A DNA stretch of 64,000 nt from Dendrobates tinctorius (taxonomy: Eukaryota): the NCBI RefSeq assembly GCF_039654945.1, contig NW_027361676.1, positions 41,292,001 to 41,356,000 on the forward strand, in the 5' to 3' direction. A program made the position numbers and the translations under genes. Position 1 is the stretch's first letter. Each line of letters begins with the position of its first letter. The notes beneath the pieces were generated by a model. It made no database searches and was not told the origin of the DNA. It saw only the letters and a list, made by a program, of their open reading frames with translations. Positions 2,020-50,834 of the stretch are shown here, piece after piece.

Positions 2020-2420
2020 GGCTACTTTCACATTTCTGGATTTTAAATCCGGCGGGCTGCGGCGAAAAGTTGTCAAACCTGATCCGGTAGGAGCCGCAGC
2101 CTGCCGGATCATCTGTTTTTGCCGGATACAGTGCAGGAGAGGGAGAGGGAAAGAGAGTCTTTGCGCATGCGCTCTGCAAAAAAGCAGTCCGGCGCTGTCA
2201 AAAAACGTTGCATGGAACGTTTTTTTGCAGACGCCGGACAGGCATTTTTTGCCGTTTCCGGCTAAAGCCGGACACGCCGCATGGCCATCAGGCGCAATGC
2301 GGCGATAATGTAAGTCTATGGGAAAAAAGCCGGATCCGGTGGCAGCAGGCGCCGGATCCGTTTTTTCCATTTTTCACCGCATCGTGCCTGATGCTTCAAA
2401 ACGGAAATGTGAAAGTAGCC
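2020..2420. mobile_element. PIF/Harbinger-type MITE
   Basis: TIR GGCTACTTTCACATTTC...GAAATGTGAAAGTAGCC, flanked by TAA/TTA; internal CCGG/GGATCC-rich subterminal repeats. Confidence 0.85.
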
Positions 2421-9192: not shown

Positions 9193-9690
9193 GGCCTGTT
9201 TCACACATCAGTTTTTTTGTCAGTCAAAATCCGCTAAAATGACGGATAGCGGATCCGTTCCTGTACTGACCACAATGTTTGTCACCGGACCATTATTTGA
9301 ACGGATCCGTCAAAGGAAGAATTTTAAAGGAACCGCTGGAGGAGGAGGAGGAGGAGGAAGGGAGAGAGAGAGAGAATTTTTCAGCCGCCAGAACAGAGTT
9401 TAGGGTTAAATTTCCAGCTGAGTGAAGTCTTTCAGCCATACGCAGTGAGAAGTGTGGATCCTGCCAGCCGAAGAAAACGTTGCATGGTCCGTTCGGGCAT
9501 GTCGGCGGACGTCAAAATTTTAGCGGATCCGCAAAAAAACGGATCCAACGGATGGCCATCCGTCAAGATCCACCTGTAATGCAACTCAATGGGAAAAAAA
9601 CGAATCCGCCAAGAAAAATGGTGGATCCGTTTTTTTTTGCAAAACGGCGGATTTTGACTGATGGACACAAATGGATGTGTGAAACAAGCC
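9193..9690. mobile_element. Harbinger-type MITE inserted into the left TIR of the piggyBac-like element
   Basis: TIR GGCCTGTTTCACACATC...GATGTGTGAAACAAGCC; perfect TTA TSD (9190-9192, 9691-9693). Confidence 0.9.
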
Positions 9691-10240
9691 TTAGTGACAG
9701 AGCCCATTTTGTACTTAAGGACCAAGCCAATTTTTACAATTCTGACCACTGTCACTTTATGAAGTTATAGCTCTGGAAAACTTAAACATATCCCACTGAT
9801 TCTGAAAATGTTTTCTCGGGACAAATTGTACTTCATGTTGGTGGTAAAAATTCTGCAATATCACTTGCGATTATTTATGAAAAAAATGTAAATTTGGCTA
9901 AAATTTTTAACATTTTGCAATTTTCAAACTTTTAATTTTTGGTCCTTACATCGGAAAGTCATATCACACAAAATAGTTAATAAATAACATCTCCCACATG
10001 ACTATTTTACATCAGCACAATTTTGGAAACATAATTTTTTTTGTTAGGACGTTATAAGGGTTAAAAGTTGACCAGCGATTTCTCATTTTTCCAACAAAAT
10101 TTACAAAATCACTTTTATTAGGGACCACCTCACATATAAAGAGTTTGGGGGGTCAATATAAGAGAAAATACCCAAAAGTGACACCGTTCTAAAAACTGCA
10201 CCACTCAAGCTGCGCAAAATCACATTCAAGAAGTTTATTA

Positions 10241-11232
10241 CCATATATACTCGAGTATAAGCCGAGATTTTCAGCTCAAATTTTTAAGCTGAAAGTGCCC
10301 CTCTCTGCTTATACTCGAGTCACCCCCACCGGTCTGTATCCCCTCTCTTCCCTGGGAGTGTTTCTTACCCCCTCCTTCACAGCAGCAGCGGCGGCAGAGC
10401 AGCGCAATCCTGGCATGTATTGAGTCCCAGAGGTAGCGGCGTGCCGGTAACGTATGGAGCAAGCGGTAGCCGTACAGCAGATGGAGGTTGCGTATTCAAT
10501 CACGTGCTGCTTTGTCACGCAGGTCCTGTCGGCTCCACAGTGCTTAATGCGAGCTACTTGTGCTACTGGAGCTGGGAGTGTTTGGAGCGTCTGAATCCCG
10601 GAGGTACTGGCGTACTGGTAATGTATGCAGCAAGCGGTAGCTGTACAGCAAGTGAAGGTTGCGGGCGGCCTGTATTTTTGTTGCGCACACTTCACTTCCG
10701 ATCCCGCTCATTATGGCTTATGAATATTCGTGATGTCACTGGAAGTGATGCGTGCGGCACTGAAAATACAGGCCGCCCGCAACCTCAGCATGCCATATGC
10801 CTACCGCTTGCTCTATACGTTACTGACATGCCGCTACCTCCGGGACTCAATACATGCCAGGATTGCGCTGCTCCGCCGCTGCTGCTGTGAAGGAGGGGGT
10901 AAGAAGCACCCCTGGGGAAGAGAGACAGACTGGAGGAGAGGGGAGACAGACCTCTTGCCTTCATGACTACTACTGCTGCTCCACATGTTACCGGCACGCC
11001 GCTACCTCCGGGACTCCATACATGACAGGATGGCGCTGCTCCATCACCGCCACTGCTGTGAAGAAGTGGGTAAGAACCATCCCCGTGAAAGACTCGCAGA
11101 CCGACAGGGAGAGGGGATACTCGCGGACCCAGTAGCTGCTGCATCTCCCCCTTGGCTTATACTTGAGTCAATACGTTTTCCCGTTTTCTTAGCTAAAATT
11201 AGGTACCTCGGCTTATACTCGAGTATATACGG
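10241..11232. mobile_element. Tc1/mariner-superfamily (Tc2/pogo-like) non-autonomous element
   Basis: TIR CCATATATACTCGAGTATAAGCCGAG...CTCGGCTTATACTCGAGTATATACGG with TA TSD. The host reads aagtttatTAacccttcag across it (cf. uninterrupted copy at 33114-33132). Internal inverted and direct repeats at 10360-11070. Confidence 0.85.
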
Positions 11233-11499
11233 TAACCCTTCAGTTGCTTCACGAGAACTGAAGCAATGTGGAAGGAAAAATGTACATTTTACTTTTGTCA
11301 CAAAAAATGTACTTTGGAACCTTACTTTTTTATTTTCACAAGGGTATCAGGAGAAATTGATACCCCAGTATGTGGGGGAAAGCCACTATTTGGATGCATG
11401 GCAGGGCTCAGAAGGGAGGGAGCACAGTTTGACTTTTTAAACGCGAAATTAGCTGGAATCAATGGCGGGCCCCATGTCACGTTTGGAGATGTACCTAAA

Positions 11500-23330: not shown

Positions 23331-23935
23331 AGCCCCCGTTACACATAACAATGTCCCAGCGATCCCACCAACGATCCGACATGATGGGATCGCTGGGTCA
23401 TCGTTAGGGTATGTGCACACGTAGTTTTTAGGTGCTGCGGATTTCTCCCCGCAGATTTTGTAAAATCTGCAGGTAAATTTCAGGTCAAAAGACCTGCGGT
23501 TTACCTGCAGATTAGGCTGCGGTTTTGCCCTGCGGTTTATCACCTCCACAATGGAGGACATGGTAAACCGCAGCATTGTCATTTCTTTCTGCGGATTTGA
23601 AACCGCAGCAAAACCGCGCGGAAAATTCCGCGGCATGTGCACAGCGGTTTCCATTTTACATAGAGTAAAATGGTGCTGTACAACGCAGCAGATTTTGCTG
23701 CGGACCCACAGGGCCAGAAATGCTGTGGATCTGCAGTAAAATCCGCAACGTGTGCACATAGCCTTAGGCTGATCGCTGGTGAGCAGTCACAAGACAGCCC
23801 CTCCAGCGATCAGGACCAGCAACGCTGGATGCTGGTTTCTAATGCAAACGTCGGGTATCCAGGAGCCACGGCCAGCGGGAGACCAGCGATCGAAAAATGG
23901 CCCAGGCCGATGCTGCACGATCAGCGATAACCGGC
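23331..23935. mobile_element. ATCGCT-family MITE fragment hosting a nested MITE
   Basis: TAA|AGCCCCCGTTACACA left end; the sequence resumes after 23766 (gatcgctggtgagcagtcac...). Confidence 0.65.
23407..23763. mobile_element. Harbinger-type MITE (GG.TATGTGCACAC family)
   Basis: GGGTATGTGCACACGT...ACGTGTGCACATAGCC with perfect TTA TSD; same family as 40198-40555. Confidence 0.9.
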
Positions 23936-31290: not shown

Positions 31291-32589
31291 CGTGAGAACG
31301 GCTGGCGAGCTGTTAAGCAAGCTACAGCACCTGTCCAGACAAGTACAGGGATTCCCTAGCGAGGAGACTTATTTGATTGTTTTCAATGTTGGGACAGCAA
31401 TTTTTGGGGAGCACTATACTCTGGAGAATGATAGATGGGGCCCACCATACACTGGAACATTCCAAAGGTGGACATCAGACACTGGAGCAGCATTTACAGG
31501 GCCCATTATACACTAGAGCATTAGAAATGGGGCCCATTATGTTTGGAGCATTATTTGGGCCCATAAGACAGTGGAGCTTCATCCATGGGGACCAACATAT
31601 ACTGTAGCATTATGTGGAGCTCATCATATACTGTTTCAAACATTATATGGGACCAATGATTCTGTATGGAGAAATAGATGGGCCTCGTCATGAGATGTAA
31701 AAAGTGAGGTATTTTTCATTGTACTATACCGCTATTTCTCTGCCGTATCGGAGCATGATGAGTTGTGGTATGTGTTAAAGGGGCGCTCTTTCGCCCAGGG
31801 CACATGAAAACCTGGAGCCAGCCCTCCTCCCCCACAGTTTGTAGCCAAATAACCCCCATTTTTCAGTGCGTAACTTGTATTATGAAGTTAATTAAGGTTG
31901 ACAAGCTTAAGAAAGAAGAATTGATGCTTTTGGCATTCAAATGGGCACTGTAGGTGTGTTTCCTGTCCTCCTCTCACTGCCGACTTTTATTCCCCATTGA
32001 CTTACATTGGGTTTCGTGTTTCGGGACGACCCCGACTTTTCCCTATAATCGGACGGTCTTGCTCGATCCGACTTTTGGAAAAGTCGGGTTTCACGAAACG
32101 AAACGCGACCCTAAAAAACCAAAAGTCGCTCAACTCTAGTTATGATACCTTAAACTGATACTTGGAGGCAGGTTTCAGATAGTCTGGTCTCCAGCTCTGT
32201 GTACATTATGGCAGCATAAGCTACACCTAAATTGCATTTGCTTTGATACCCTGATATTGTTTTTCATATTGCTGCCTTGGCGCGCATGTTTCTGGGGACC
32301 AATTGTCTTAATAATTTCTACCATGATGTTTTCATTATGACTGTATATATGCTATTATGTATGCCCTGGACCCATGCTTTTTACTAGGGTGATGTGTCCT
32401 CTTTGTGCTACTTTTTTGTGAACAGTGATTTTCTATATGCATTTATAATTGTTAAATAAAGTTTGATACTTTTTATATTTTGTATATTACTCCATTTCTT
32501 GTTTTTTGCTTTTTTTTTTCATATTGTGTAGGCGTATACAACTACCTTCCATGCTCAATTACATGGGGAAATACAAATACTGTATTTAA

Positions 32590-33236
32590 CCCCTTTGAGA
32601 CGAAGCCTGTTTTCACCTTAATGACCTGGCTAATTTTTACAATTCTGACCACTGTCACTTTATAAGGTAATAACTCTGGAATACTTCATTGGATCCCGGT
32701 GATTGAGGCTGTTTTCTCATGACATATTGTAGTTTATGATAGCGGTAACATTTCTTCGGTATGATTTGCGTTTATTTGTGAAAAAAATGGAAATTTCGCA
32801 ATTTTCAAGCTTTTAATTTTTATGCCCTTAAATCAGAGCGTCATATCAAACAAAATAGTTAATAAACAACATTTCCCACATGTCTACTTTACATCAGCGC
32901 AATTTTGGAACCAAAATTTTTTTTGTTAAGAAGTTATAAGGGTTAAAAGTTGACCAGCGATTTTTCATTTTTCAACAAATTTTACAAAACCATTTTTTTT
33001 AGGGACCTCCTCGAATTTGAAGTCACTTTGAGAAGTCTATATGAAAGAAAATACCCAAAAGTGACACCCTTCTAAAAACTGCACCCCTCAAAGTACTCCA
33101 AACCACATTTAAGAAGTTTATTAACCCTTCAGGTGATTCACAGGAATTTTTGGAATGTGGGAGGAAAGCATAAACATTTACTTTTCTTTCTCAAACATTT
33201 TCCTTTAGACCAATTTTTTTTTAACTTTTGCAAGGG
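32590..33236 (+). mobile_element. piggyBac-like non-autonomous element, left part (host of the Harbinger composite)
   Basis: TTAA|CCCCTTT start; colinear with 9694-10240 and 50119-50767; breaks at caagggTAA. Confidence 0.85.
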
Positions 33237-33616
33237 TAAGGCCGGAGTCACACTGGCGAGGAATACGGGTGCGTGAGAGGCGCAAAAAGCACGCATTAGA
33301 CACGGACCAATGATTCTCTATGGGGTCACTCGCACCAGGCGTATATTTCTCCTCCGTATCCTCCGCTCCGTGCCACTCGCAGCATGCTGCAATTGTCAGC
33401 GTACTACGCCCGTAGCACGCCAATGCAAGTCTATGGGTGCGCAAAAAATACCGATTACACACTGAACACACGTGTGACCTGCGAGCAATACGCAGGTCTT
33501 TTGGCTGGTGACCAGGAAATGGGCCAATCCATCATCAGGAAGCGTAGACATGCAAATGAGCTCAAAAAGCGCTCCAGACATCCAGGAAGTCAGCCTCCAC
33601 GGAGTACAGCAGCAGC

Positions 33617-35387
33617 ATGGCGTCCACTTACATAAATGTGGAGATGCTAATTGTGCTGGTGCAGGAGCGTTCAGAAATATGGGACCCACGCGACGCAAAC
33701 TATGCGAACCGCACAAGAAAGGAGGCGTCATGGAGGCGCATCTGTCGCCAGATGTACCATGACTTCGGTGACAGACCACGTGATGAGCAGCAGAAAATTC
33801 GTAAGTGCACCCATAAAAATGTAATTAACGTTAGCGCGCGCTATAAGATGACTCTACAATCAGCCCCACCCCCACCTTCCTGGGCATGTAATTTTAGCCT
33901 CATGAGGCCGTTACATTAGGATGTGACACGTGGCTTCACACAGCCATAATTAGGGGTTTAGGCCACAAGCTCCTCATCCTCCTAGCCACAAAAATTAGTT
34001 TCAGGGGAGCTAATGAGACCCTGGGTATCGGCCCAATTACATATGCCACCATGGGTAGAACGCACACCCCATAAGGCCCCATGCCTAGACTACTGTTTGA
34101 AAATGTGACCTCTCAAATATGTGATTTTGACAATCTTTCCTGTCACATTGCAGTGGAAGATGTGATGAAACGGTGGAGAAGCATCCGGGACCAGTACCGC
34201 CGGGAACGCCAGCAGCGGTCCAGGAGTGGGGATGCTGGCCATGTCAAGCGGAAATATATATATTATGACCGGCTGAACTTCCTCGCCCCAATTCTGGCTC
34301 TGAGACCGTAAGTACATACCTCACACCACATGACACAAAAACATTACACAAATACTTTACAGGGACAAAAATATTGATGTATTTTTGCCTCTGTTCTATT
34401 TCATAACAGAACTCAATCCAACCTTACGGATCGAGGAACGGCCTCAGAGGCAGAGCCCGTTATTGATCCTGTAGGGGATGAGGTGGCTGGCCCATCTTCT
34501 CCCCCTACAAGAAGGATGTCTGAAGAGGAGGCATCACAAGAGCACACAATGGCTGCCCGACACAACACACCACCAGGACGGTCTGCAGCTGCAACCTCAC
34601 CCATCCTGGAAGAGATGGGCAACTTGAGCAGCAGCCCAACTGCCCAGATCAGGCCCTCCCCACAGGCTGCTCTAGCAACACGGCGAATAAGAAGAAGGCG
34701 CCAGGTCGCCATTCAAGAGAGCAGGACCAATGTGGACACTGGGGTGCTGAATTACTTGTCCAGAGTCACTACAGATGATGGTGAGGAGGCCTATGCACGT
34801 AGCCTCACCCTTTATCTCCGTGCCCTTACCCGTGAGGTCAGGCTCCGTATTAGGGGGTGTATTCAGATCCTGCTTGATGCAAGCACCCCCCCAATACCCC
34901 ATATGAGGTGTTTGAATTTCTGGAGAGGTGGCAGCTGTCACCAAGAAATTTAATGCGCATGAGACCATCCACACAGATGCTTGCTCAAGCAGGGTCTGAA
35001 CAGCCCCTAATACGTGGGCCAACACCTCAACCCCTTCCTCCCCCTACCCATCCTTCTATTCCGCAGCCCCAAATGTCTTCATCAAGCCAACCCCACCAAT
35101 ATGGCCACTTGTACCCACCCAGTGTTGGAGGCTGGTCCCAACCTGGTTGGGGACGATCTGGCTATCTTGGTGGGTATGAGCCACGGGCCTACCATAGCCA
35201 ACAAGAAGCCCCTCACCATCATCATTATTACTCTGGCCAGTATCACCAACAGGCCCAGGAGGCTGGACAACAACAGCATCATGGGCAACAGTATGGCCCC
35301 ACACAGGGCGATGTTGGCCACAATGTCCAGCAGCACCCACAGGCTGTTCCTCCCCGTTCCCCTTCCCCTACATATGAGGATTTATGA
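33617..35387 (+). CDS. Harbinger DNA-binding protein (MADF/Myb-SANT plus BESS-like motif); exons 33617-33800, 34154-34307, 34410-35387; one frameshift in the C7 run 34886-34892
   Basis: MADF-type tryptophans LIVLVQERSEIWD...EASWRRI...VMKRWRSIRDQYRRE...YIYYDRLNFL. GTAAGT donors at 33801 and 34308 and CAG acceptors ending 34153 and 34409 keep frame. BESS-like DDGEEAYARSLTLYLRAL...RLRIRGCIQILL. ~438 aa if one C is added. Confidence 0.88.
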
Positions 35388-36313
35388 ATCAAAACTTTGG
35401 AGATGTCCAGTGACATGTAACTGGTGCTTCTAATCTAGACAAAAAAACAGGTGTTCTCCTTCACCAACATTTAGAACATAATTTAACACTCACATTTGTA
35501 AACAATGTTTTCCAAACATATGAAACAATCCATCATGACAGGCAACGCTACCTCACGCCTTTCACACAGATATTACATGTGTGTATAAAAGAGAATATTT
35601 AAATGCGCTATACTGTTACCTGAAAGGATGAAAATACACTAATCACTTGTTAATGCATAGGAAAGGTGTGCTTGCCTTTAGTTAAGTAGTCAACTTTGTT
35701 ATTAGCATTCTTTAGTAAACCAATTTGAGGCGACCAGCATTCACAATATCACGCTCTCTCTATGTCTTAACAAGTGAGTTTTGTATTTTCATCCTTTCCA
35801 GTATAGCATGCTTAAATATTGTCTGTTCTACAGACAGGTAATATCTGTGTGAAAGATGTGAGGTAGCCTTGCCTGTCATGGTGGAATCTTTCTATGTTTG
35901 GAAAACATTATGAGGAAATGTGAGTGTTATCTTATTGACTTTATTTTGGTGATGGAGCTAACCCTTTGTTGCCTAATCCAGGTTAATGTAGGCATGCAGC
36001 AATGTTGTTATTGCATAATGTTTGTTGCAGTTTTTTTCTGTTATGTTAATGTTACATCAAGTTAACGAAGGCCCAAAGGGTCATTTTGGCCATTGCCAAA
36101 TTTGTGTTATGGCAAAATTATGTTTGCCTTTAAGCAAAACCCAAAAAAAAAAGGCAAAACTAAAAATTTGTCTACTCTAGTTAACGTCTCTGTGTGATTT
36201 CTCACTATCCCTCACAACATACTAACAGACACCAACCAATGCAAAGAAACACTCATAGAATCATAAAAAGGCTTGAGTAATATATATTTAGACACACTTT
36301 GACCAAAAAAAAA

Positions 36314-37830
36314 TTAGAACATAGACACAGCATTCTCTTGCCAAGAAGTAGCCCCCTCAGGTGAGATAAAGTAATTAGTGAATATATCACGCACTTTGAG
36401 GCCAGAGAGCGGTCTACGTTGAGGGATGATAGGTGGTCTCACCCTGCGCACATTGTCCGGCCTACGCACAACACCATCAGAGGAGGAGCAATCATGTATC
36501 CTGGTGAAGTTATGCAGAACAACACAGGCTTTCACAACTTCATTCACATTTTGCTCACTCAACTGAATGGCAGACTGGAGTACCCGCCATTTGGCACAAA
36601 GAATCCCAAAGGAACACTCCACCAGTCGCCTAGCACGTGATAGGCGCAAGTTAAAAATTCTGCGCCTGTGGTCAAGGTTGCGCCGGGGATATGGCCTCAT
36701 GACATTACGTGATAACTGAAAGGCCTCATCTGCCACAAGGACATAAGGGACTGATTGTTCGGGGGAGCCTGGTAGCTGGCGTGGTGGTGGTAGATCCAAC
36801 TGGTTGGTGCGTAGCCGCCGACCCATTATGGAAGTATTGAAGACTCTAGAGTCTCCCGTCCTTCCATAGGCCCCAATGTCAACAATTATAAACTTGTATT
36901 GAGGGTCTACCAGAGCCAACAATACAACAGAAAAGTATTGCTTATAATTGAAGAATTGTGACCCTGAGTTCGGCGGCTTACGCACCCTGATATGTTTGCC
37001 ATCCAGGGCCCCAATACAATTTGGAAACTGGCAGTCCTCCTCAAAGTCCCTTGAAATCCTTAACCAGTCTTCCATCCTGGGCTCTGGTAGGACCACCTGA
37101 TGGAGTCTTGTCCAGATTTGTGCACATGTAGACCTCACTATGCCTGAAATGGTGGACTTTCCAATGAGAAACTCATGGTGGAGGGCGGCATAAGACAGGC
37201 CAGTGGACAGGAAGCTGTAGAACAACAGAAATAGTCCAGGTTAGAATGGCTAAAGTAAAAAAAAATCAGTTACATGCCGACCAAACTTGGTAGGAAATGA
37301 GAGAGAACAACACACACATATTTGGTGGCACAATGACTAAGTGATATGCAGTACATATTAGATGTAACATTGTGCTGTGTCAGGTGAAACATATTTTGAG
37401 TAAGATGAGGGTATTAAACATTGTCCAAGAAGGCCAAAAAACATAAATTAACACACACATTATGAACATAGAGAATGTGGTTGTGGAGTACATACCGTAT
37501 TGTGAGTAGAAGTCGCTCCTCTGCAGATATGGCTTGGCGCATCCTAGTGTCCTGAAATGTGATCCCAGGGCGCACTGTCTCCAAGAGGCGATCAAATGTG
37601 GAAATGCTCATTCGACAGTACTGGTAAAATTTGTCCGGATGCTCCCGCAGAGACGAATAGAGGCGGTGAAAATGCCCTCTTGTGAGTCGTTGCCTCAAAA
37701 GTGGATGTACCCACATGCGTCTCCTCCTCCGTGGATCCACTATCACAGGATATGGTTGGCCAAAGCGCCGTGACAAAAGCCAGGTAAAGAGAACCTGCTC
37801 GGTTGTATTGAATGTCAGACCCTCTGACAT
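36314..37830 (-). CDS. Harbinger DDE nuclease/transposase (HARBI1-like); exons 37830-37496 and 37214-36314; 411 aa, apparently intact
   Basis: MSEGLTF...WVHP...YCRMSISTFDRLL...ISAEERLLLTIR|FLSTG...CIGALDGKHI...LVADEAF...RRLVECSFGIL...ACVVLHNF; GT-AG intron 37495-37215 preserves frame; 1,236 nt. Confidence 0.93.
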
Positions 37831-38820
37831 GCTGCACAAAGAACACCAACACACCTCGTGAAAGCAAGGTGAGAAATGTACAGAATGTAGGCAGCCACCT
37901 GTTTCTGAGTGTCTAAATAGGGTGCAGGCTAATGATTTAAATTGTTTGCAGGCCTCAAAACCGTTAAATGTCCATTTTGCAAGGCTGCGAGAAACTCTCG
38001 CCATACGGATTGCATACGGATTGCATACGGAGACATACATGCGCAAAATACGCGACCTCACCTTGCTTACGGATGACCTACGGACCACTATTTAGTGGTC
38101 ATTGATCCGTATTACGCATGTAAAATACGGAGCGTATTTTGCGCAGGTTAGTGTGACTCCAGCCTTAATATAGGGCACACAAGTTTGCGCTTAGTGCTCA
38201 AATGGTGCGACTAACATTAAATTCTAAGCTATACTCCTGGTGACTGGAGAATAATGTAATTTATCACTAACTACTACATTGTTCAGTAAATGCAATATAA
38301 AGCTATTTTAGGATAATCGAAAAAGCAGTGCTAGTTGTGTGCTTCTTTGAAATGTCCAGGGGATCTGAACTTAGCAGCAAGACTGTAGAACCGACCAAGA
38401 AAAATAGACAGTGAAGCCAGTGCTTGTAGAGAAACACTTTTCAGCTACTGGAAGTTCATGGTGTCCCAGGTGAGACCTTGGAAGCTCAGGGCGGATATAC
38501 AATTTACTGTTTTTGGACAATATAATATTACTGGATAGTCGAGATATGGGTTTCATATGGGCTTAATGGTAAACTACTGTATAAAGACCACAGTATGTTC
38601 AGAGCTTTCTTGGAGCATTAAAATATACCTGGACAGTGCTCAACTATACTACTGTGTGTGCCGGAAGGGCTTCATTTGGTCAAGATACCAGTGGACTTTA
38701 TTCACACAGATACATGCAATGTGTCCTGCATGAGAACAGCTTCAAATGTGAAGCTGAAAGATCACATGTATCTGTGTGATATCATGATATTAGGGGCTGA
38801 CATGCCATATGTTCAACCTT

Positions 38821-39832
38821 TGTAAGGAGGTGGCAGAGAACCTCACATGCCTCCTCTCCCTTGGACGTTGTCTGCACGATTACAAGTGGCATTGTTCTTT
38901 AATGTGAAACGTAATGTTTATGTACTGTGATGTCATGTATTTGAAATGTATTGCGTATATGTTTAGGATTAGGGAATGAGTTAGCATAGAATAATAGCGG
39001 GGTTAAAATAGAGGGGGGCACATTAGAGAATAGGATAGATAATAGTGTCAGTTTAGGCACAGGCAGGAAGGGGTTAAGCAAATGGGAGGGGTCACAGTGC
39101 AGAGCAGCACAGAGCAGGGAGATATAGGACTGGCACTTCCTGATTAGAATAGGGACCCGGGCAGCCTGTCCAGGGCAGGTTATATGAGTAGTGGAGCAGA
39201 CAGTGGCTGGCTGTGGAGATGTCTTCTTTGAAAGTAAGGGGCCCCAAGTGGAGAACAGTGCAGTCAGGCAACAGCTCAACAGGACCATCCTCAAGAAGGA
39301 TCCAGGGTCTAAGACCAGGCGGAAGCAACCGAGATGGCATTCCCGGCACCTTTCTCAATTGGAACCAGACGAGGGGCTGACAGGTAGCTGGTGACGTGGA
39401 AGGCACAGATGGAACATGGACTGTCCAAAGAGATTGCCCGGATGGCAAGGAAAATTAAGGCACGGACAGAACAGAGTCTGGCTAGAAGTATGGTCGTGAA
39501 CGCCGGGAGGAAAGAAAGAGAGATTACAGAAGGAATACAGTCTGCCCAGAAGGAAGTTCAGGATACATGGCTCTGTGTGAATTGTGCTGCCAAGCTGATG
39601 AGTGCCGTTTCGATAAGTAAAGTTGAACTGTTGGAAAAAGACTGACTCTGGAGTGTTTTGTGGAACTGGGAAAACAGAAGCCGGAGTGGCAGAACTGGAA
39701 GGAATCCTGACAGTAACCGTGAGTGTTCTGCTGCACGCACTGCACATGTAGCAAAAAGGACACTGTATTTCATTTGTGGAGTGCCAGGGTGTGGGGGCTC
39801 ATTGCCACGACTACCACCGTGGCCGCCTTACA
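38821..39832. mobile_element. Solo LTR (Gypsy/ERV-type), 1,012 bp
   Basis: TGTAAGG...CCTTACA termini with a 4-bp TSD CCTT (38817-38820, 39833-39836). Confidence 0.85.
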
Positions 39833-40197
39833 CCTTCACAGCTGTGCAGTAGGCTTAGTTGGTAGTGGGCCCTCTGCACCCAAAAAGCAGCTTATTACTG
39901 TCTATAAGATTACATGTAAGGGACTGAACAAGGAGTTTCATGATCTGTATTTCCAAACTTTGCCGGTTAAGACTTTATGAAATGGGTCGACCACTTTGGA
40001 TAATTCCTACCTGATGGAAGGGTCCATTAGAAGTCAGCTTATTGTCAAAGTGCCCCCCCAAGCTGGTACAAATCACCAACGGATATTATCTGTGGGGTCA
40101 CTATAACGGCATTTACATGGAGTGTAAATGGGCTACCGATCACCCTATGTACAAGCAAAATGCTCGTTAATGGGGTGAAATGATCTATGCACACTAA

Positions 40198-40555
40198 GGC
40201 TATGTGCACACACTGTGGAATCACCTGCGAGTTTTTCCCCGCAGAACCGCAGGTAAAACCGCAGGTAAAATGACCTGCGGTTTTGCTGCGGTTTGGCCTG
40301 CGCTTTTGCCCTGCTGTTTCACACCTCTACTATGTTAAAGGTGTGAAACCGCAGCGGAATCCGCAGAAACAATTGACATGCTGTGGTTTATAAACTGCAG
40401 CAAATCCGCGCGGAAAAAACCGCAGCGTGAGCACTGTGGTTTTGAAAACCCATAGGGTTACATGGTACTTTACCATGTCTGCGGAACTGATGCGGTTCCG
40501 CAGGGCCAAAACCGCAGCGGAACCGCAGCAAAAACCGCAGCGTGTGCACACAGCC
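40198..40555. mobile_element. Harbinger-type MITE
   Basis: TAA|GGCTATGTGCACAC...GTGTGCACACAGCC; same family as 23407-23763. Confidence 0.85.
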
Positions 40556-40614
40556 TCTATTACAGATCACTCAATGCATATTACTTACCATGGCCTGCCT
40601 GTGCAAAAGGCTAT

Positions 40615-41255
40615 GGCTGGAGTCACACTAACCTGCGCAAAATACGGTCAGTATTTTACATGCGTAATACGGATGACAGACCCCTAAACAGTGCTCCGTA
40701 TGTCATCCGTAATCAAGGTGTGGTTGCGTATTTTGCGCATGTCAGCATCCGTATGTATTCCGTATGGCATCCGTATGGTGAGATTTTCTCGCATTCTTGC
40801 AAAATGGACATATAATGGAGCCCTATGACAGTTTTAATAAAGAAATGAAAGAATAGATATAGACACATAGAATGCATATATATATATATATATATGTATT
40901 CTATGTGTCTATATCTATTCTTTCATTTCTTTATTAAACCTGTCAGTGTGAGTTTACTGTATCGCGCACTGAATTGCCGGCTTTGCTAAAAGACACCTGG
41001 TGTGTATTTCTCGCAAGTCACACGTGTGGTCTGTGTGTAATCCGTATTTTTTGCGCACCCATAGACTTGCATTGGCGTACTACGGGCGTATTACGCTGAC
41101 AATCGCAGCATGCTGCGAGTGGCACGGAGCGTAGGATACTGAGGAGAAATATACGCCTGGTGCGAGTGACCCCATAGAGAATCATTGGTCCGTGTCTAAT
41201 GCGTGCTTTTTGCGCCTCTCACGCACCCGTATTCCTCGCCAGTGTGACTCCGGCC
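40615..41255 (-). mobile_element. Non-autonomous derivative of the Harbinger at 33240-38164, inverted orientation
   Basis: The reverse complement of ~40995-41255 matches 33240-33500 almost exactly; 40615-40815 matches the right end 37965-38164 with more mismatches; the middle is a short (TA)n-centred palindrome. Confidence 0.93.
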
Positions 41256-41258
41256 TTA

Positions 41259-42155
41259 CAGGAAAAAATGGACCATACATTTTGCTGTGCCATTTCTCCT
41301 GAGCATGCTGATACCCCATATGTGAGGGGAAATCTACTGTTTGGGCACAAGGCAGGGCTTGGAAGGGAAGGAACGCCATTTGACTTTTTGAATGTAAAAT
41401 ATGCTGGAAAAATTAGCAGTTGCCATGTCACATTTGGAAAGCCCCTGATGTGCCTATACAGTGGAAACCCCCCACAAGTGACACCATTTTGCAAACTAGA
41501 TCCCTTAGGGAACTTATCTAGATGTGTATTGAGCACCTTGAACCCACAGGTGTTTCACAGAAGTTTATAACGTAGAGCTGTGGAAATAAAAAAATCAAAT
41601 TGTTCACAAATAAATCTTTTAGCTCCAAATTTTGCCTTTACATAAGGGTAAAAGGAGAATTTGCGCAATACAATTTGTTGTGCAATTTCTCCTGAGTACT
41701 CCGATACCCATTATGTGGAGTAAAACAACTGTTTGGATGCACAGCAGGGCTTGGAAGGGAAGGAACTCCATTTGACTTTTGGAATACAAAAATTGATTGA
41801 ATAATTAGTGAAAGCCATGTCACATTTGGAGAGCCCCTGATGTGCCTAAACAGTGGAAACCCCTCACAAGTGACACCATTTTGGAAATTAGGCCCCTTTA
41901 GAACTTATCTAGATGTGTATTGAGCATCTGGAACCCACAGGTGCTTCACAAAAGTTTATAGCGTAGAGCCATGGAAATAAAAAAAAAAAATCACATTTTT
42001 TCCAAATAAATCTTTTTTAGCTCCATATTTTCCATTTTCATAATGGTAGTAGGATAAATTGCTCTATACAATTTGTTGTGCAATTTCTACTGAGTACGCC
42101 GATACCCCATATGTGGGGGAATACTACTGTTTGGGTGCCTGTCAGGGCTTGGAAT
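41259..42155 (+). mobile_element. piggyBac-like element, continuation of 32590-33236, with ~380-400-bp internal tandem units
   Basis: Resumes caggaaaaaatgg...tttctcctgagcatgc as in the uninterrupted copy (50762-50820); the unit repeats at ~41260, ~41650 and ~42050. Confidence 0.85.
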
Positions 42156-42750
42156 TTTGAATCAGTTTGGAATGTCAATGGAACCATCCTACGTAAAGTT
42201 GGAAGCAGAAGATCTGTTACCTAACAATGAGAAATACAGAAAGGCAATGGGGGAACTTCTACACATAGGAACTATGACTCGACTGGATATCGCAGCAAAG
42301 ATTGGAATTTTCTGCAGATATGTGGAAAAACCATGCCAAAAAGACTGGAATGCCGTTAAGTGAGTTTTTCGATATTTGAAAGAGGCTCAAGACATAAATT
42401 TAAGGATATCTGCAACTAGAGATCTAAAACTCACAGCCTAGCCTAATGCAGGCTGGACTCGTGACTAAAATGAACATAAATCGACAAGTGGTTATTTGTT
42501 CAAGCTTGGAGAAAGTTAAATTTCTTGGTCTAGCAGAAAACAGGTGTCTGTAACTTTATCATCTACAGAAGTAGAGTATGTGTCTGCAACCCACGCAAGT
42601 CAAGAGGTCATTTGTTTAAACCAATTGTTAGGCGTTCTTGGTAAGCCACCAACTCCTCCAACAGTATGAAGACATCCAAGGATGCATTAAACTTGCATGC
42701 AGTGAGAAGATCAATGTGAGAACAAAACACATTGACGTTAAACATCATCA
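42156..42750 (+). pseudogene. Ty1/copia pol fragment (RT C-terminus and RNase H)
   Basis: YRKAMGELLHIGTMTRLDIA, KSTSGYLFKLG, ISWSSRKQVSVTLSSTEVEYVS, RTKHIDVKHH; multiple stops. Confidence 0.92.
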
Positions 42751-42894
42751 GTAGGGGTGTTGGAATAATGCTTATTATTGTATATACTGCATCAACTACT
42801 AGTTACTACTGTTTAATAGTGCATGAGTTTCTGTCTCCATAGTGATATATTGCCAAAAATACATTGTTAAAAAAAAAAAATTCAGTAAGTTCAT

Positions 42895-43571
42895 TGTCAC
42901 GGGACTACTGCAACAGACAGGTGTCAGAAGACTGCAACTTTGAATATCCTGTACTCCTTCACTGATTAGAAGCACCTCTCCATCATAATAAATGGTGCAG
43001 GTTTCTTCTAGCAGTGCAGAGGGTAAACTATTCTGTTGAGAGCTTCTAGAGCTTTCCAGCGTTGATGGTCTTAGCTGTTCAGTGTTGGCCACTCTTCCCT
43101 CCTATATATACTCGCTTCTGGCTATAAGGGATGTCAGTGTTAGTTTTTTGCCTCCTGGCTCTAGAGCTGGACTAGATGCTTGTTTGAGGAGGCATTTGGA
43201 GTGCTTATCTGAAAACCGTTGCTTGTTATTCAGTTGTTTGCATTTCCTCATCCTCTCCTACTTGTTTTTTTCTAACCTTTACTCTCCTGTTTTCCATTCT
43301 GTTGTTTGTGAGTGCATGTTAGTGTGATTGGTATTTTCCTTTATCCCAGTACCTATTCCCTTGTTAGTCTGGTTTGTGTATTTTCATATGCTACTACTAC
43401 CCACTTCTCTGGGTCTGGGAGAGAACAGATTAGGGGCGGATTCAGGATCACAGCAAGGTACGTGGCCCTGGCATCTTGACCATTAGAAGTAATCTGGGGA
43501 GCAGGGATAGCTAGGGCACCCATAGCGCTAAGGACAAGGAAGGAGCCCCTGGTCCCGGGATATCCACAACA
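42895..43571 (+). mobile_element. Probable LTR fragment
   Basis: Starts TGTCACGG, has a TATA-like cctatatata at ~43101, ends ...CAACA; no TSD confirmed. Confidence 0.5.
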
Positions 43572-50118: not shown

Positions 50119-50832
50119 CCCCAAGGGTGGTTTGGATGTTAATGACCGGGCCAATTTTTACAATTTTGACCACTGTCCCTTTATGAGGTGATAACTCTGG
50201 AACGCTTCAAAGGATCTTGGCGATTCTGAGACTGTTTTTTCATGACATATTATACTTCACGTTAGTGGTAAAATTTCTTTGATATAACTTGCGTTTATTT
50301 GTGTAAAAAAACAGATTTGGTGAAAATTTAGCAATTTTCAAATTTTGAATTCTTATGCCTTTAAAACAGAGAAATATGTCACACAAAATAGTTAATAAAT
50401 AACATTTACCACATATCTACTTTACATCAGCATAATTTTGGAACCAAAATTTTTTTTCTTAGGAAGTTAGCAAGGTTAAAATTTGACTAGTGATTTCTCA
50501 TTTTTACAACAAAATTTACAAAACCATTTTTTAGGGACCACCTCGCTTTTGAAGTCACTTTGCGCGGTCTATAAGGCAGACAATACCCAAAAGTGACACC
50601 ATGCTAAAAACTACACCCCTCAAGCTGATCAAAACAACATTCAAGAAGTTTATTAACCCTTCAGGTGCTTCACAGGAATTAATGGAATGTGAAAAGAAAA
50701 AATGAACATTTAATATTTTTTCACTAAGTTGTCACTTTAGACTAAATTTTTTTTAATTTCACAAGGGTAACAGGAAAAAATTAACCCCAAAATTTATTAT
50801 ACAATTTCTCCTGAACATGCCAATACCCAATA
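50119..50832 (+). mobile_element. piggyBac-like non-autonomous element, left part
   Basis: TTAA|CCCC start; colinear with 32590-33236 and uninterrupted at caagggtaacaggaaaaaa. Confidence 0.85.
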
Positions 50833-50834
50833 TA

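What the first reader, a model, noticed from the sequence alone, without database searches (positions are those of the whole stretch)
33237..41258. Composite Harbinger macro-transposon: autonomous element, 2.45-kb cargo and inverted MITE moved as one 8-kb unit between two LEFT ends
Seen: the host repeat breaks at ...caagggTAA (33231-33239) and resumes at TTAcaggaaaaaa... (41256 onward); the uninterrupted paralogue reads caagggtaacaggaaaaaa (50762-50780). Between the breaks lie L-[autonomous Harbinger]-R, then 38165-40614 (unrelated DNA including a TSD-flanked solo LTR and another MITE), then R-[non-autonomous copy]-L. Both outer ends are the same left end (GGCCGGAGTCACACTGGCGAGG, near-identical for ~255 bp). 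The inner flanks (TTA at 38165, TAT at 40612) are not continuous with the host. Simple inversion between the two copies cannot explain contiguous outer flanks. Inference: a Tn10-like composite transposition capturing genomic DNA, analogous to Ac/Ds macrotransposons but using two identical ends; I do not know of this being described for vertebrate Harbingers. Caveat: the outer trinucleotides are TAA/TTA (central mismatch), as also seen for several MITEs here.
Basis: partly seen in the sequence, partly recalled or inferred. Interest (0 to 1): 0.85.

Follow-up and report, generated by a model that had tools for sequence, protein, structure and literature searches.

The report
Composite Harbinger transposon carrying foreign DNA
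In a poison-frog genome, a complete Harbinger jumping gene, 2.45 kb of unrelated DNA and a small inverted relative sit together as one exact 8-kb insertion; most likely the pair moved, or was copied, as one unit, which is known in maize and inferred in rice but not reported for vertebrate Harbingers.

Summary
Removing 33240-41258 (8,016 bp plus one 3-bp duplication) joins the two host halves into a sequence that aligns without a gap across the joint to four paralogous units.

Both outer termini are the same "left" end: 255 bp at 95.7%, with the first 115 bp identical. Both "right" ends face inward onto 2.45 kb of non-coding DNA that is single- or low-copy apart from a repeated block and a MITE. 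Element A has an intact spliced transposase and MADF exons. B is a 641-bp non-autonomous copy.

The best explanation (about 0.6) is a transposase reaction on the two left ends of two linked, inverted elements. This is either a macrotransposon jump or a maize-style composite insertion.

Short-read contigs confirm the A/cargo joint. They also show the cargo's left edge, from TTA at 38165, in a second context without A. That context could be the native locus or an A-less allele; I could not read it.

The donor locus, spanning long reads and an allelic empty site remain untested. The right-hand duplication is TTA where the host consensus is TAA.

The kind of event is known: Ac/Ds macrotransposons, and an inferred mPing "megatransposon" excision in rice. 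This scan also flagged composite candidates elsewhere in this genome.

The parts
32592..33236 (.). Left half of the interrupted host repeat
   Evidence: Aligns to 50139-50767 and 9689-10240
33237..33239 (.). Left target-site trinucleotide TAA, equal to the host family consensus
   Evidence: consensus from loose ends
33240..38164 (+). Element A: 4,925-bp autonomous Harbinger, oriented L to R
   Evidence: TIRs and arms; two genes
33240..33494 (+). Left-end arm of A; 255 bp, 95.7% identical to B's left arm, first 115 bp identical
33617..34311 (+). MADF/Myb-like partner gene: two ORF pieces with MADF_DNA_bdg hits (33617-33919 and 34081-34311). Further open frames run to about 35387; full splicing was not reconstructed
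36314..37830 (-). Transposase gene: exon 1 ends at 37496, GT-AG intron 37495-37215, exon 2 is 37214-36314. About 411 codons from the Met at 37830; complete DDE_Tnp_4 domain
   Evidence: DDE_Tnp_4 E=9e-34, profile 1-158/158; splice join ..LTIR|FLSTG..
37961..38164 (+). Right-end arm of A, with six copies of the TCCGTA motif in its outer 160 bp
38165..40614 (.). Cargo: 2,450 bp of non-coding DNA foreign to the host repeat, bounded by TTA (38165-38167) and TAT (40612-40614). 38165-38784 and 39979-40177 lie at unique-sequence depth
38862..39804 (.). Moderately repeated block inside the cargo. Contigs of another organism break at both of its edges. Its identity as a solo LTR was not verified
   Evidence: depth bins; X9 records 29 and 32
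40197..40556 (.). Unrelated Harbinger-type MITE nested in the cargo, with a CTA/CTA duplication; a relative lies at 23407-23763
40615..41255 (-). Element B: 641-bp non-autonomous copy, inverted (R to L on the + strand). R arm 40615-40818, AT-rich palindrome at about 40836-40935, L arm 41001-41255
41256..41258 (.). Right target-site trinucleotide TTA; differs from TAA at the central base
41259..42154 (.). Right half of the host repeat: tandem units of about 393 bp, each carrying the same ..aagggTAAcagg.. site
50768..50770 (.). Uninterrupted paralogous target TAA, serving as a paralogous 'empty site'

Best explanation
Two members of one young Harbinger family sat 2.45 kb apart in inverted orientation at another locus, with their right ends facing each other: an autonomous element (A) and a short non-autonomous one (B). 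The family's transposase, recruited by its MADF partner protein, paired the two outward-facing left ends instead of the two ends of one element. It cut out (or, in S phase, copied) A + intervening DNA + B and integrated the 8,016-bp block at a TAA inside a host repeat, duplicating the trinucleotide. Shown: the exact 8-kb interruption of a repeat whose paralogues are continuous at that TAA; identical left termini at both outer joints; right termini facing inward; cargo foreign to the target and at unique-sequence depth in its non-repeated parts; an intact transposase in A; and the A/cargo joint present in reads. Inferred: that the block arrived in a single transposase-mediated event using two left ends; that the inner TTA is the remnant of A's own duplication at the donor; and that the second context of the cargo's left edge is the native (A-less) cargo locus or an allele from which A was lost.
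For: Precise, gap-free continuity of the flanks against four paralogous units, with family consensus TAA at the site. Both outer joints are trinucleotide + GGCCGGAGTCACACT..., and the L arms are identical for their first 115 bp. The cargo shares nothing with the host repeat. Its unique parts lie at depth about 13 in run X1, against 10^4-10^5 for the Harbinger arms, so this is not a multi-copy chimeric family. A is structurally competent: complete DDE_Tnp_4 domain, a clean GT-AG splice and MADF exons. The A-R|cargo joint is held in 6 of 6 sampled words by two runs of the probable source sample, and in 4 of 6 by two more. An 879-letter contig in X1 starts exactly at 38165. A 1,081-letter contig in X2 matches 38165-38850 without a mismatch but carries 395 other letters to its left. 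So identical cargo, TTA included, exists without A's right end, as expected if A had inserted at a TTA of a native cargo locus. Precedent in the superfamily: linked mPing pairs excise as a 'megatransposon' (PMC7584900). Parsimony on the duplications: with target TAA, this model needs one base change (41257), whereas the sequential model needs two.
Against: Only one locus was examined. No donor, allelic empty site or spanning long read was seen, and the hostL|A and B|hostR joints were not checked in reads. The outer trinucleotides differ (TAA/TTA), and they are equally A's own flanks. B's inner flank is TAT, not TWA. The two ends of this family are not equivalent: R arms carry five or six TCCGTA motifs in their outer 160 bp, L arms at most one. 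A left-left pair may therefore be a poor substrate, and no assay exists for this. The second context of 38165 could instead be an A-less allele of this same locus, which would also fit the sequential model.
Confidence: 0.6

Rival explanations
1. Composite insertion by reversed-ends transposition with re-replication, as for maize Ac/fAc. At the donor the two left ends faced each other. They were cut and inserted at the TAA during S phase. On this reading the cargo is two donor flanks fused by end joining, not the DNA that lay between the elements. This is a sub-variant of the best explanation: it still requires a left-left reaction.
For: It yields exactly the observed topology: L ends out, R ends in, flanking DNA in the middle, and one target duplication. 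The mechanism is documented for hAT elements (papers listed: eLife 2014 PMC4270019; bioRxiv 10.1101/2020.08.10.245175). Contigs of another organism break at 38861/38862 and 39804/39805, so the cargo may not be one colinear piece.
Against: No end-joining junction was identified. The breaks at 38862 and 39804 are as well explained by a repeat inserted in this lineage. It has never been shown for PIF/Harbinger.
Confidence: 0.12
2. Two sequential events. First, 'cargo + B' (38168-41255) was mobilised alone, using B's left end and a cryptic end at 38168, and inserted at the host trinucleotide. Later, A inserted exactly into its left duplication (or the reverse order).
For: A's own flanks (TAA/TTA) fit a simple insertion as well as they fit the composite. 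38165-38167 and 41256-41258 are both TTA, which would be a perfect duplication for 'cargo + B'. The cargo's left edge exists without A in the same individual. The first 30 nt of the cargo weakly resemble a Harbinger-type MITE end (p about 0.006 before correcting for 9 comparisons). Another reader noted MITE-Harbinger-MITE trains elsewhere in this genome.
Against: It needs two rare events, including an insertion at one exact trinucleotide. 38168 has no real TIR and no TCCGTA motifs, and the similarity is not significant after correction. With host consensus TAA, it needs two independent central A-to-T changes.
Confidence: 0.1
3. In-situ origin. A and B inserted independently at the same TAA with their right ends abutting. 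A transposase cut at the two facing right ends made a break, which was repaired with 2.45 kb of filler DNA copied or captured from elsewhere.
For: It explains a surviving native copy of the cargo (the second context) with no further event. Break repair with filler DNA at mPing break points is reported (PMC7584900).
Against: It needs two same-site insertions plus an unusually long filler. The shared sequence with the second context starts at TTA (38165). That is what A's own duplication at a native locus would give, whereas a random capture end point would coincide with it only by chance.
Confidence: 0.07
4. Assembly artefact: a false join through Harbinger repeats placed the cargo and B between A and the right host half.
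For: The family is extremely abundant. Two of the four joints were not checked in reads. A second context for 38165 exists.
Against: The A-R|cargo joint is present in four runs. A false structure would need two exact chimeric joins at element termini that, by accident, restore a perfectly continuous host repeat with a flanking trinucleotide pair. The arms that could mislead an assembler are inverted and only 87-96% alike.
Confidence: 0.04

Closest known systems
Ac/Ds macrotransposons of maize (hAT superfamily; Huang & Dooner 2008 from my own knowledge; discussed in PMC9910405 and PMC3260210, listed, which I did not open)
   Same: Two linked elements and the DNA between them move as one unit. 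One target duplication flanks the whole, so genomic DNA is relocated.
   Different: Ac/Ds uses a 5' end and a 3' end of elements in direct orientation. Here the elements are inverted, so two like (left) ends are used. The superfamily, the two-protein transposition machinery and the host (a vertebrate) also differ.
mPing 'megatransposon' in rice (PIF/Harbinger; Chen et al. 2020, PMC7584900)
   Same: Same superfamily. The transposase is inferred to act on the distal termini of two linked elements, taking 8.1 kb of intervening DNA with them. Linked elements also excise more often.
   Different: In rice only the deletion at the donor was seen, never a reinsertion. Here only the insertion product is seen, never the donor.
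Composite insertions from reversed-ends transposition in maize (PMC4270019; bioRxiv 10.1101/2020.08.10.245175)
   Same: The final anatomy is identical: element termini outward, element bodies, then donor flanking DNA fused in the middle, with one target duplication.
   Different: The mechanism copies rather than moves, and the cargo is two flanks joined by end joining. It is shown only for hAT.
Bacterial composite transposons Tn10/Tn5 and the engineered Sleeping Beauty 'sandwich' vector (own knowledge)
   Same: Two inverted copies bracket a cargo, and the two equivalent outer ends are the ones used.
   Different: These are prokaryotic IS elements or an engineered Tc1/mariner vector, with different transposases. 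They are stable, repeatedly mobile units, whereas this one is at most a one- or two-copy product.

Membership tests
PIF/Harbinger superfamily (element A) | DDE transposase of the DDE_Tnp_4 / Plant_tran type | tested here: met
   PF13359 E=9e-34 covering profile 1-158/158; PF04827 E=4e-9; the spliced frame is open from 37830 to 36314.
PIF/Harbinger superfamily (element A) | Second gene for a Myb/SANT/MADF DNA-binding partner | tested here: met
   MADF_DNA_bdg hits on 33617-33919 (E=3e-8) and 34081-34311 (E=6e-9), on the strand opposite to the transposase. The complete exon structure was not rebuilt.
PIF/Harbinger superfamily (A and B) | Short TIRs and a 3-bp TWA target duplication | tested here: inconclusive
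   The 15-bp TIR GGCYGGAGTCACACT is at all four ends. Flanks of A are TAA/TTA and of B are TAT/TTA, so all are TWA-like but neither pair is identical.
Macrotransposon / composite transposon | Two complete elements of one family bracket unrelated DNA, with transposable termini facing outward | tested here: met
   L arms at both outer edges, R arms facing the cargo; the cargo is unrelated to the elements and to the target.
Macrotransposon / composite transposon | The whole block is one insertion: flanks are contiguous at an empty site, with one target duplication | tested here: met
   Gap-free continuity against four paralogous units. The duplication is TAA/TTA, with one central mismatch. The empty sites are paralogous, not allelic or orthologous.
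Macrotransposon / composite transposon | A donor locus, or a second copy with different outer flanks, showing that the block moved | not testable with these tools
   No genome-wide search of this frog was available. The only hint is that contigs show the cargo's left edge in a second, unread context.
Macrotransposon / composite transposon | The transposase can pair the two ends used (here left with left) | not tested
   Needs a transposition assay. The sequence shows asymmetric subterminal motifs: TCCGTA 5-6 times in R arms, at most once in L arms.

The most novel reading that the evidence does not exclude
A vertebrate Harbinger transposase can pair two left ends of separate elements and thereby relocate kilobases of ordinary genomic DNA, very recently in this lineage. 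The cargo copy without A is identical over at least 686 bp, and A is intact. The resulting block can then shed its autonomous half by precise excision. That would leave 'one real end + captured DNA' units, a route by which odd cargo-bearing non-autonomous elements could arise.
Probability: 0.3. Interest if true: 0.65.

Novelty: new member of a known kind. Interest (0 to 1): 0.5.

Why it matters
Macrotransposition is one of the few ways in which cut-and-paste elements move host DNA, including genes and regulatory regions. It has been shown mainly for hAT elements in plants. For PIF/Harbinger, only the donor-side deletion has been inferred, in rice.

A clean insertion product in a vertebrate, with paralogous empty sites as an internal control, would show that the reaction completes. 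It would also show that two like ends suffice. The poison-frog genome holds thousands of young Harbinger copies and other candidate composites, which makes it a natural place to measure how often this happens.

The claim is testable with data that already exist: long reads and haplotype assemblies of this individual, and genomes of relatives.

Tried and rejected
1. Retrieving the second context of 38165. I looked up two ORFs of the unique cargo (61 and 58 aa) in the contig collection, hoping to fetch the contig; neither is on record.

2. Searching earlier scan notes by sequence for the cargo gave blanks.

3. Solo LTR. A scan for TG..CA ends with a 4-6 bp duplication gave only chance-level candidates, for example 39083-40153 with AGCAAA, which conflicts with the depth profile. 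Not verified.

4. Genes or RNAs in the cargo. There were no Pfam hits above cut-off and no Rfam hits.

5. A cryptic Harbinger end at 38168. It shows weak likeness to one MITE end only, not significant after correcting for 9 comparisons, and has no TCCGTA motifs.

6. A multi-copy chimeric 'L...L' element family. Rejected, because the unique cargo lies at depth about 13 against 10^4-10^5 for the arms.

7. Rejected on logic:
   - Inversion between the two copies, because recombination between the inverted L arms leaves the same topology.
   - Insertions of A and B into homologous TAA sites of different tandem units, because host units, not foreign DNA, would then lie between them.
   - Gap repair or template switching after excision, because it would place a right end, not a left end, next to one host half.
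   - A Hi-C ligation artefact at the TTAA of 38165-38168, because it would branch one base further in and would not give a 395-letter contig at normal depth.

8. The TAA/TTA mismatch as a family habit. Only six Harbinger-type elements with readable flanks lie in the window: two perfect TTA/TTA pairs, one CTA/CTA, two TAA/TTA and one TAT/TTA. That is too few to conclude anything.


Full report
**What is there**

A self-comparison of 32,000-43,000 against the window shows two inverted repeat pairs:
- 33236-33494 against 41259-41001 (95.8%).
- 37961-38167 against 40818-40612 (87%).

Direct alignment refines this.
- The 'left' arms are 255 bp, 244/255 identical and gap-free. Their outermost 115 bp are identical.
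- The 'right' arms are 204 bp at 87.3%, with the outermost 24 bp identical.
- All four termini carry one 15-bp TIR, GGCYGGAGTCACACT.

So 33240-38164 is an element A written L to R, and 40615-41255 is a 641-bp element B written R to L. The 2,450 bp at 38165-40614 lie between their two right ends.

**Element A is an autonomous Harbinger**

- On the minus strand there is a transposase with a complete DDE_Tnp_4 domain (E=9e-34, profile 1-158/158).
- Its upstream exon joins through a canonical GT-AG intron (37495-37215) to give ...LTIR|FLSTGLSYAAL..., open from the Met at 37830 to the stop at 36314.
- On the plus strand, two ORF pieces carry MADF_DNA_bdg.
- Earlier notes of this scan name the genome as the dyeing poison frog and describe young, multi-copy Harbingers there.
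- Summed contig depth on the arms is 10^4-10^5, against about 13 on unique DNA. This agrees in kind, although the tool warns that depth is not copy number.

**The block is one precise insertion**

I joined 32400-33239 to 41259-42600.
- The joined sequence aligns as a single 698-bp block (81.4%) to 50139-50833, running 63 bp past the joint.
- It also aligns across the joint to the copy at 9689-10240 / 11233-11487.
- In a multiple alignment with four paralogous units there is no gap at aagggTAA|caggaaaaaat.
- Loose-end consensus from 28-30 contigs of the host family in two organisms reads ACAAGGGTAACAGGAG. The target was therefore TAA, and the right-hand TTA (41256-41258) is the deviant copy.

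The host repeat contains tandem units of about 393 bp that each carry this site. But two insertions in different units would leave host units between them, and the cargo has no similarity to the host repeat.

**The cargo**

- There are no Pfam or Rfam matches.
- 38165-38784 and 39979-40177 lie at unique-sequence depth.
- About 38.86-39.80 kb is moderately repeated.
- 40197-40556 is an unrelated Harbinger-type MITE with a CTA/CTA duplication.
- I could not verify the 'solo LTR with TSD'.

**Evidence from reads**

All available runs are short-read contigs.
- The A-R|cargo joint (38138-38197) is held in 6 of 6 sampled words by two runs, and in 4 of 6 by two more, all from the probable source sample. 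That joint is therefore real.
- In run X1 an 879-letter contig begins exactly at 38165.
- In run X2 a 1,081-letter contig matches 38165-38850 with no mismatch using its letters 396-1081. Its first 395 letters fit nothing in 35800-41750.

At the neighbouring MITE boundary, unique contigs run 27 bp into the repeat, as expected for 31-mers. A break exactly at 38165 therefore means that the word starting at TTA has two different predecessors. The same individual carries identical cargo, TTA included, without A's right end.

I could not read those 395 letters (reads tools exhausted). Two readings remain:
- The native cargo locus in its state before A inserted at that TTA. The composite model predicts this locus should exist.
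- An A-less allele of this locus, arising either by precise excision or as the state before A inserted. Precise excision is typical of the superfamily: 109 of 110 events in PMC2836001. Excision is also raised for linked pairs (PMC7584900).

Another organism's run holds the unique cargo at about 96%. Its contigs break at 38861/38862, 39804/39805 and 40195/40196. The repeated block and the MITE may therefore be younger than the surrounding cargo, but I could not see that organism's flanks.

**Mechanism**

Each of these alternatives fails on the anatomy:
- Inversion between the copies.
- Template switching during gap repair.
- Insertions in different tandem units.
- A multi-copy chimeric family.

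The details are under Tried and rejected.

What remains is a transposase reaction on the two outward-facing left ends. It could take either of two forms:
- A macrotransposon jump of A + intervening DNA + B.
- The maize-type 'composite insertion', in which left ends that face each other at the donor are inserted during S phase and the donor flanks are copied in and fused.

Both need left-left pairing, and the sequence alone cannot tell them apart.

The main non-composite rival is sequential. 'Cargo + B' would move on B's left end plus a cryptic end, and A would later land exactly in its duplication. That requires all of the following:
- Two rare events.
- A cryptic end with no real TIR.
- Two independent central A-to-T changes, given the TAA consensus.

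**Weak points**

- The evidence comes from one locus.
- The outer trinucleotides differ (TAA/TTA), and they are equally A's own flanks.
- B's inner flank is TAT.
- Two of the four joints, the donor locus and an allelic empty site are untested.
- The ends are asymmetric: five or six TCCGTA motifs in the outer 160 bp of the R arms, against at most one in the L arms.

In zebrafish Harbinger3_DR, the Myb-like protein binds a 9-bp subterminal motif (as summarised in PMC9710019). If TCCGTA is the equivalent motif here, a left-left pair may be a poor substrate. That is either evidence against the model or the most interesting point of the finding.

**Comparison and novelty**

- Macrotransposons are established for Ac/Ds.
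- For PIF/Harbinger, Chen et al. 2020 (PMC7584900) inferred a 'megatransposon' excision by two linked mPings with 8.1 kb between them, but saw no reinsertion.
- My literature searches found no vertebrate Harbinger case.
- Use of two equivalent outer ends is normal for Tn10/Tn5 and works for engineered Sleeping Beauty sandwich vectors (own knowledge).

This is therefore a new member of a known kind, not a new kind. The scan has flagged similar candidates elsewhere in this genome: a hAT macrotransposon, a MITE-Harbinger-MITE train, and a Harbinger-centred palindrome. I did not test any of them.

**Verdict**

- Observation: confirmed.
- Interpretation: the best available, at about 0.6 for the simple composite jump; the composite-insertion variant carries a further 0.12. 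It is not proven.
- Interest: moderate, 0.5.

Noticed in passing
window 38165 (contigs of runs X1 and X2): The cargo's left edge occurs in a second context in the same sample. One contig starts exactly at 38165. Another carries 395 unmatched letters before it and then matches 686 bp with no mismatch. The unmatched letters could not be read.
   Followed up: partly
window 37865-38164 and 40615-40830 versus 33240-33539 and 40990-41255: Subterminal motif asymmetry. TCCGTA(T) occurs five or six times in the outer 160 bp of both right arms but at most once in the left arms. All 11 copies in the 64-kb window lie in these Harbinger arms. It is a candidate MADF-protein binding site.
   Followed up: partly
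window 40836-40935: The middle of element B is a long AT-rich perfect palindrome with an (AT)n centre. The reads tool notes that reads seem cut at 40865-40908.
   Followed up: no
window 2020-2420: Another Harbinger-type MITE (TIR GGCTACTTTCACAT) also has TAA on one side and TTA on the other. An extra matching left end lies at 734. Central-base mismatches in TWA duplications may be recurrent here. One speculative cause: the excised element carries a flanking overhang from its donor site, giving a heteroduplex at the middle base.
   Followed up: partly
window 39176-40238: Run X8 (another sample of the same organism, kind unknown) covers this part of the cargo at depth about 100-130 and about 98% identity, but has zero depth on 38188-38784. 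This may be a transcribed or amplified relative of the repeated block.
   Followed up: no
window 38861/38862, 39804/39805 and 40195/40196: Contigs of another organism (run X9) match the unique cargo at about 96% but stop matching at these points. The repeated block and the MITE may be insertions younger than the split of the two organisms.
   Followed up: no
window 41259-42154, 50139-50833, 9689-11487: The host repeat ends in tandem units of about 393 bp. Each unit repeats the same ..aagggTAAcagg.. target. The copy at 9689-11487 is itself interrupted at 10241-11232 by other DNA.
   Followed up: partly
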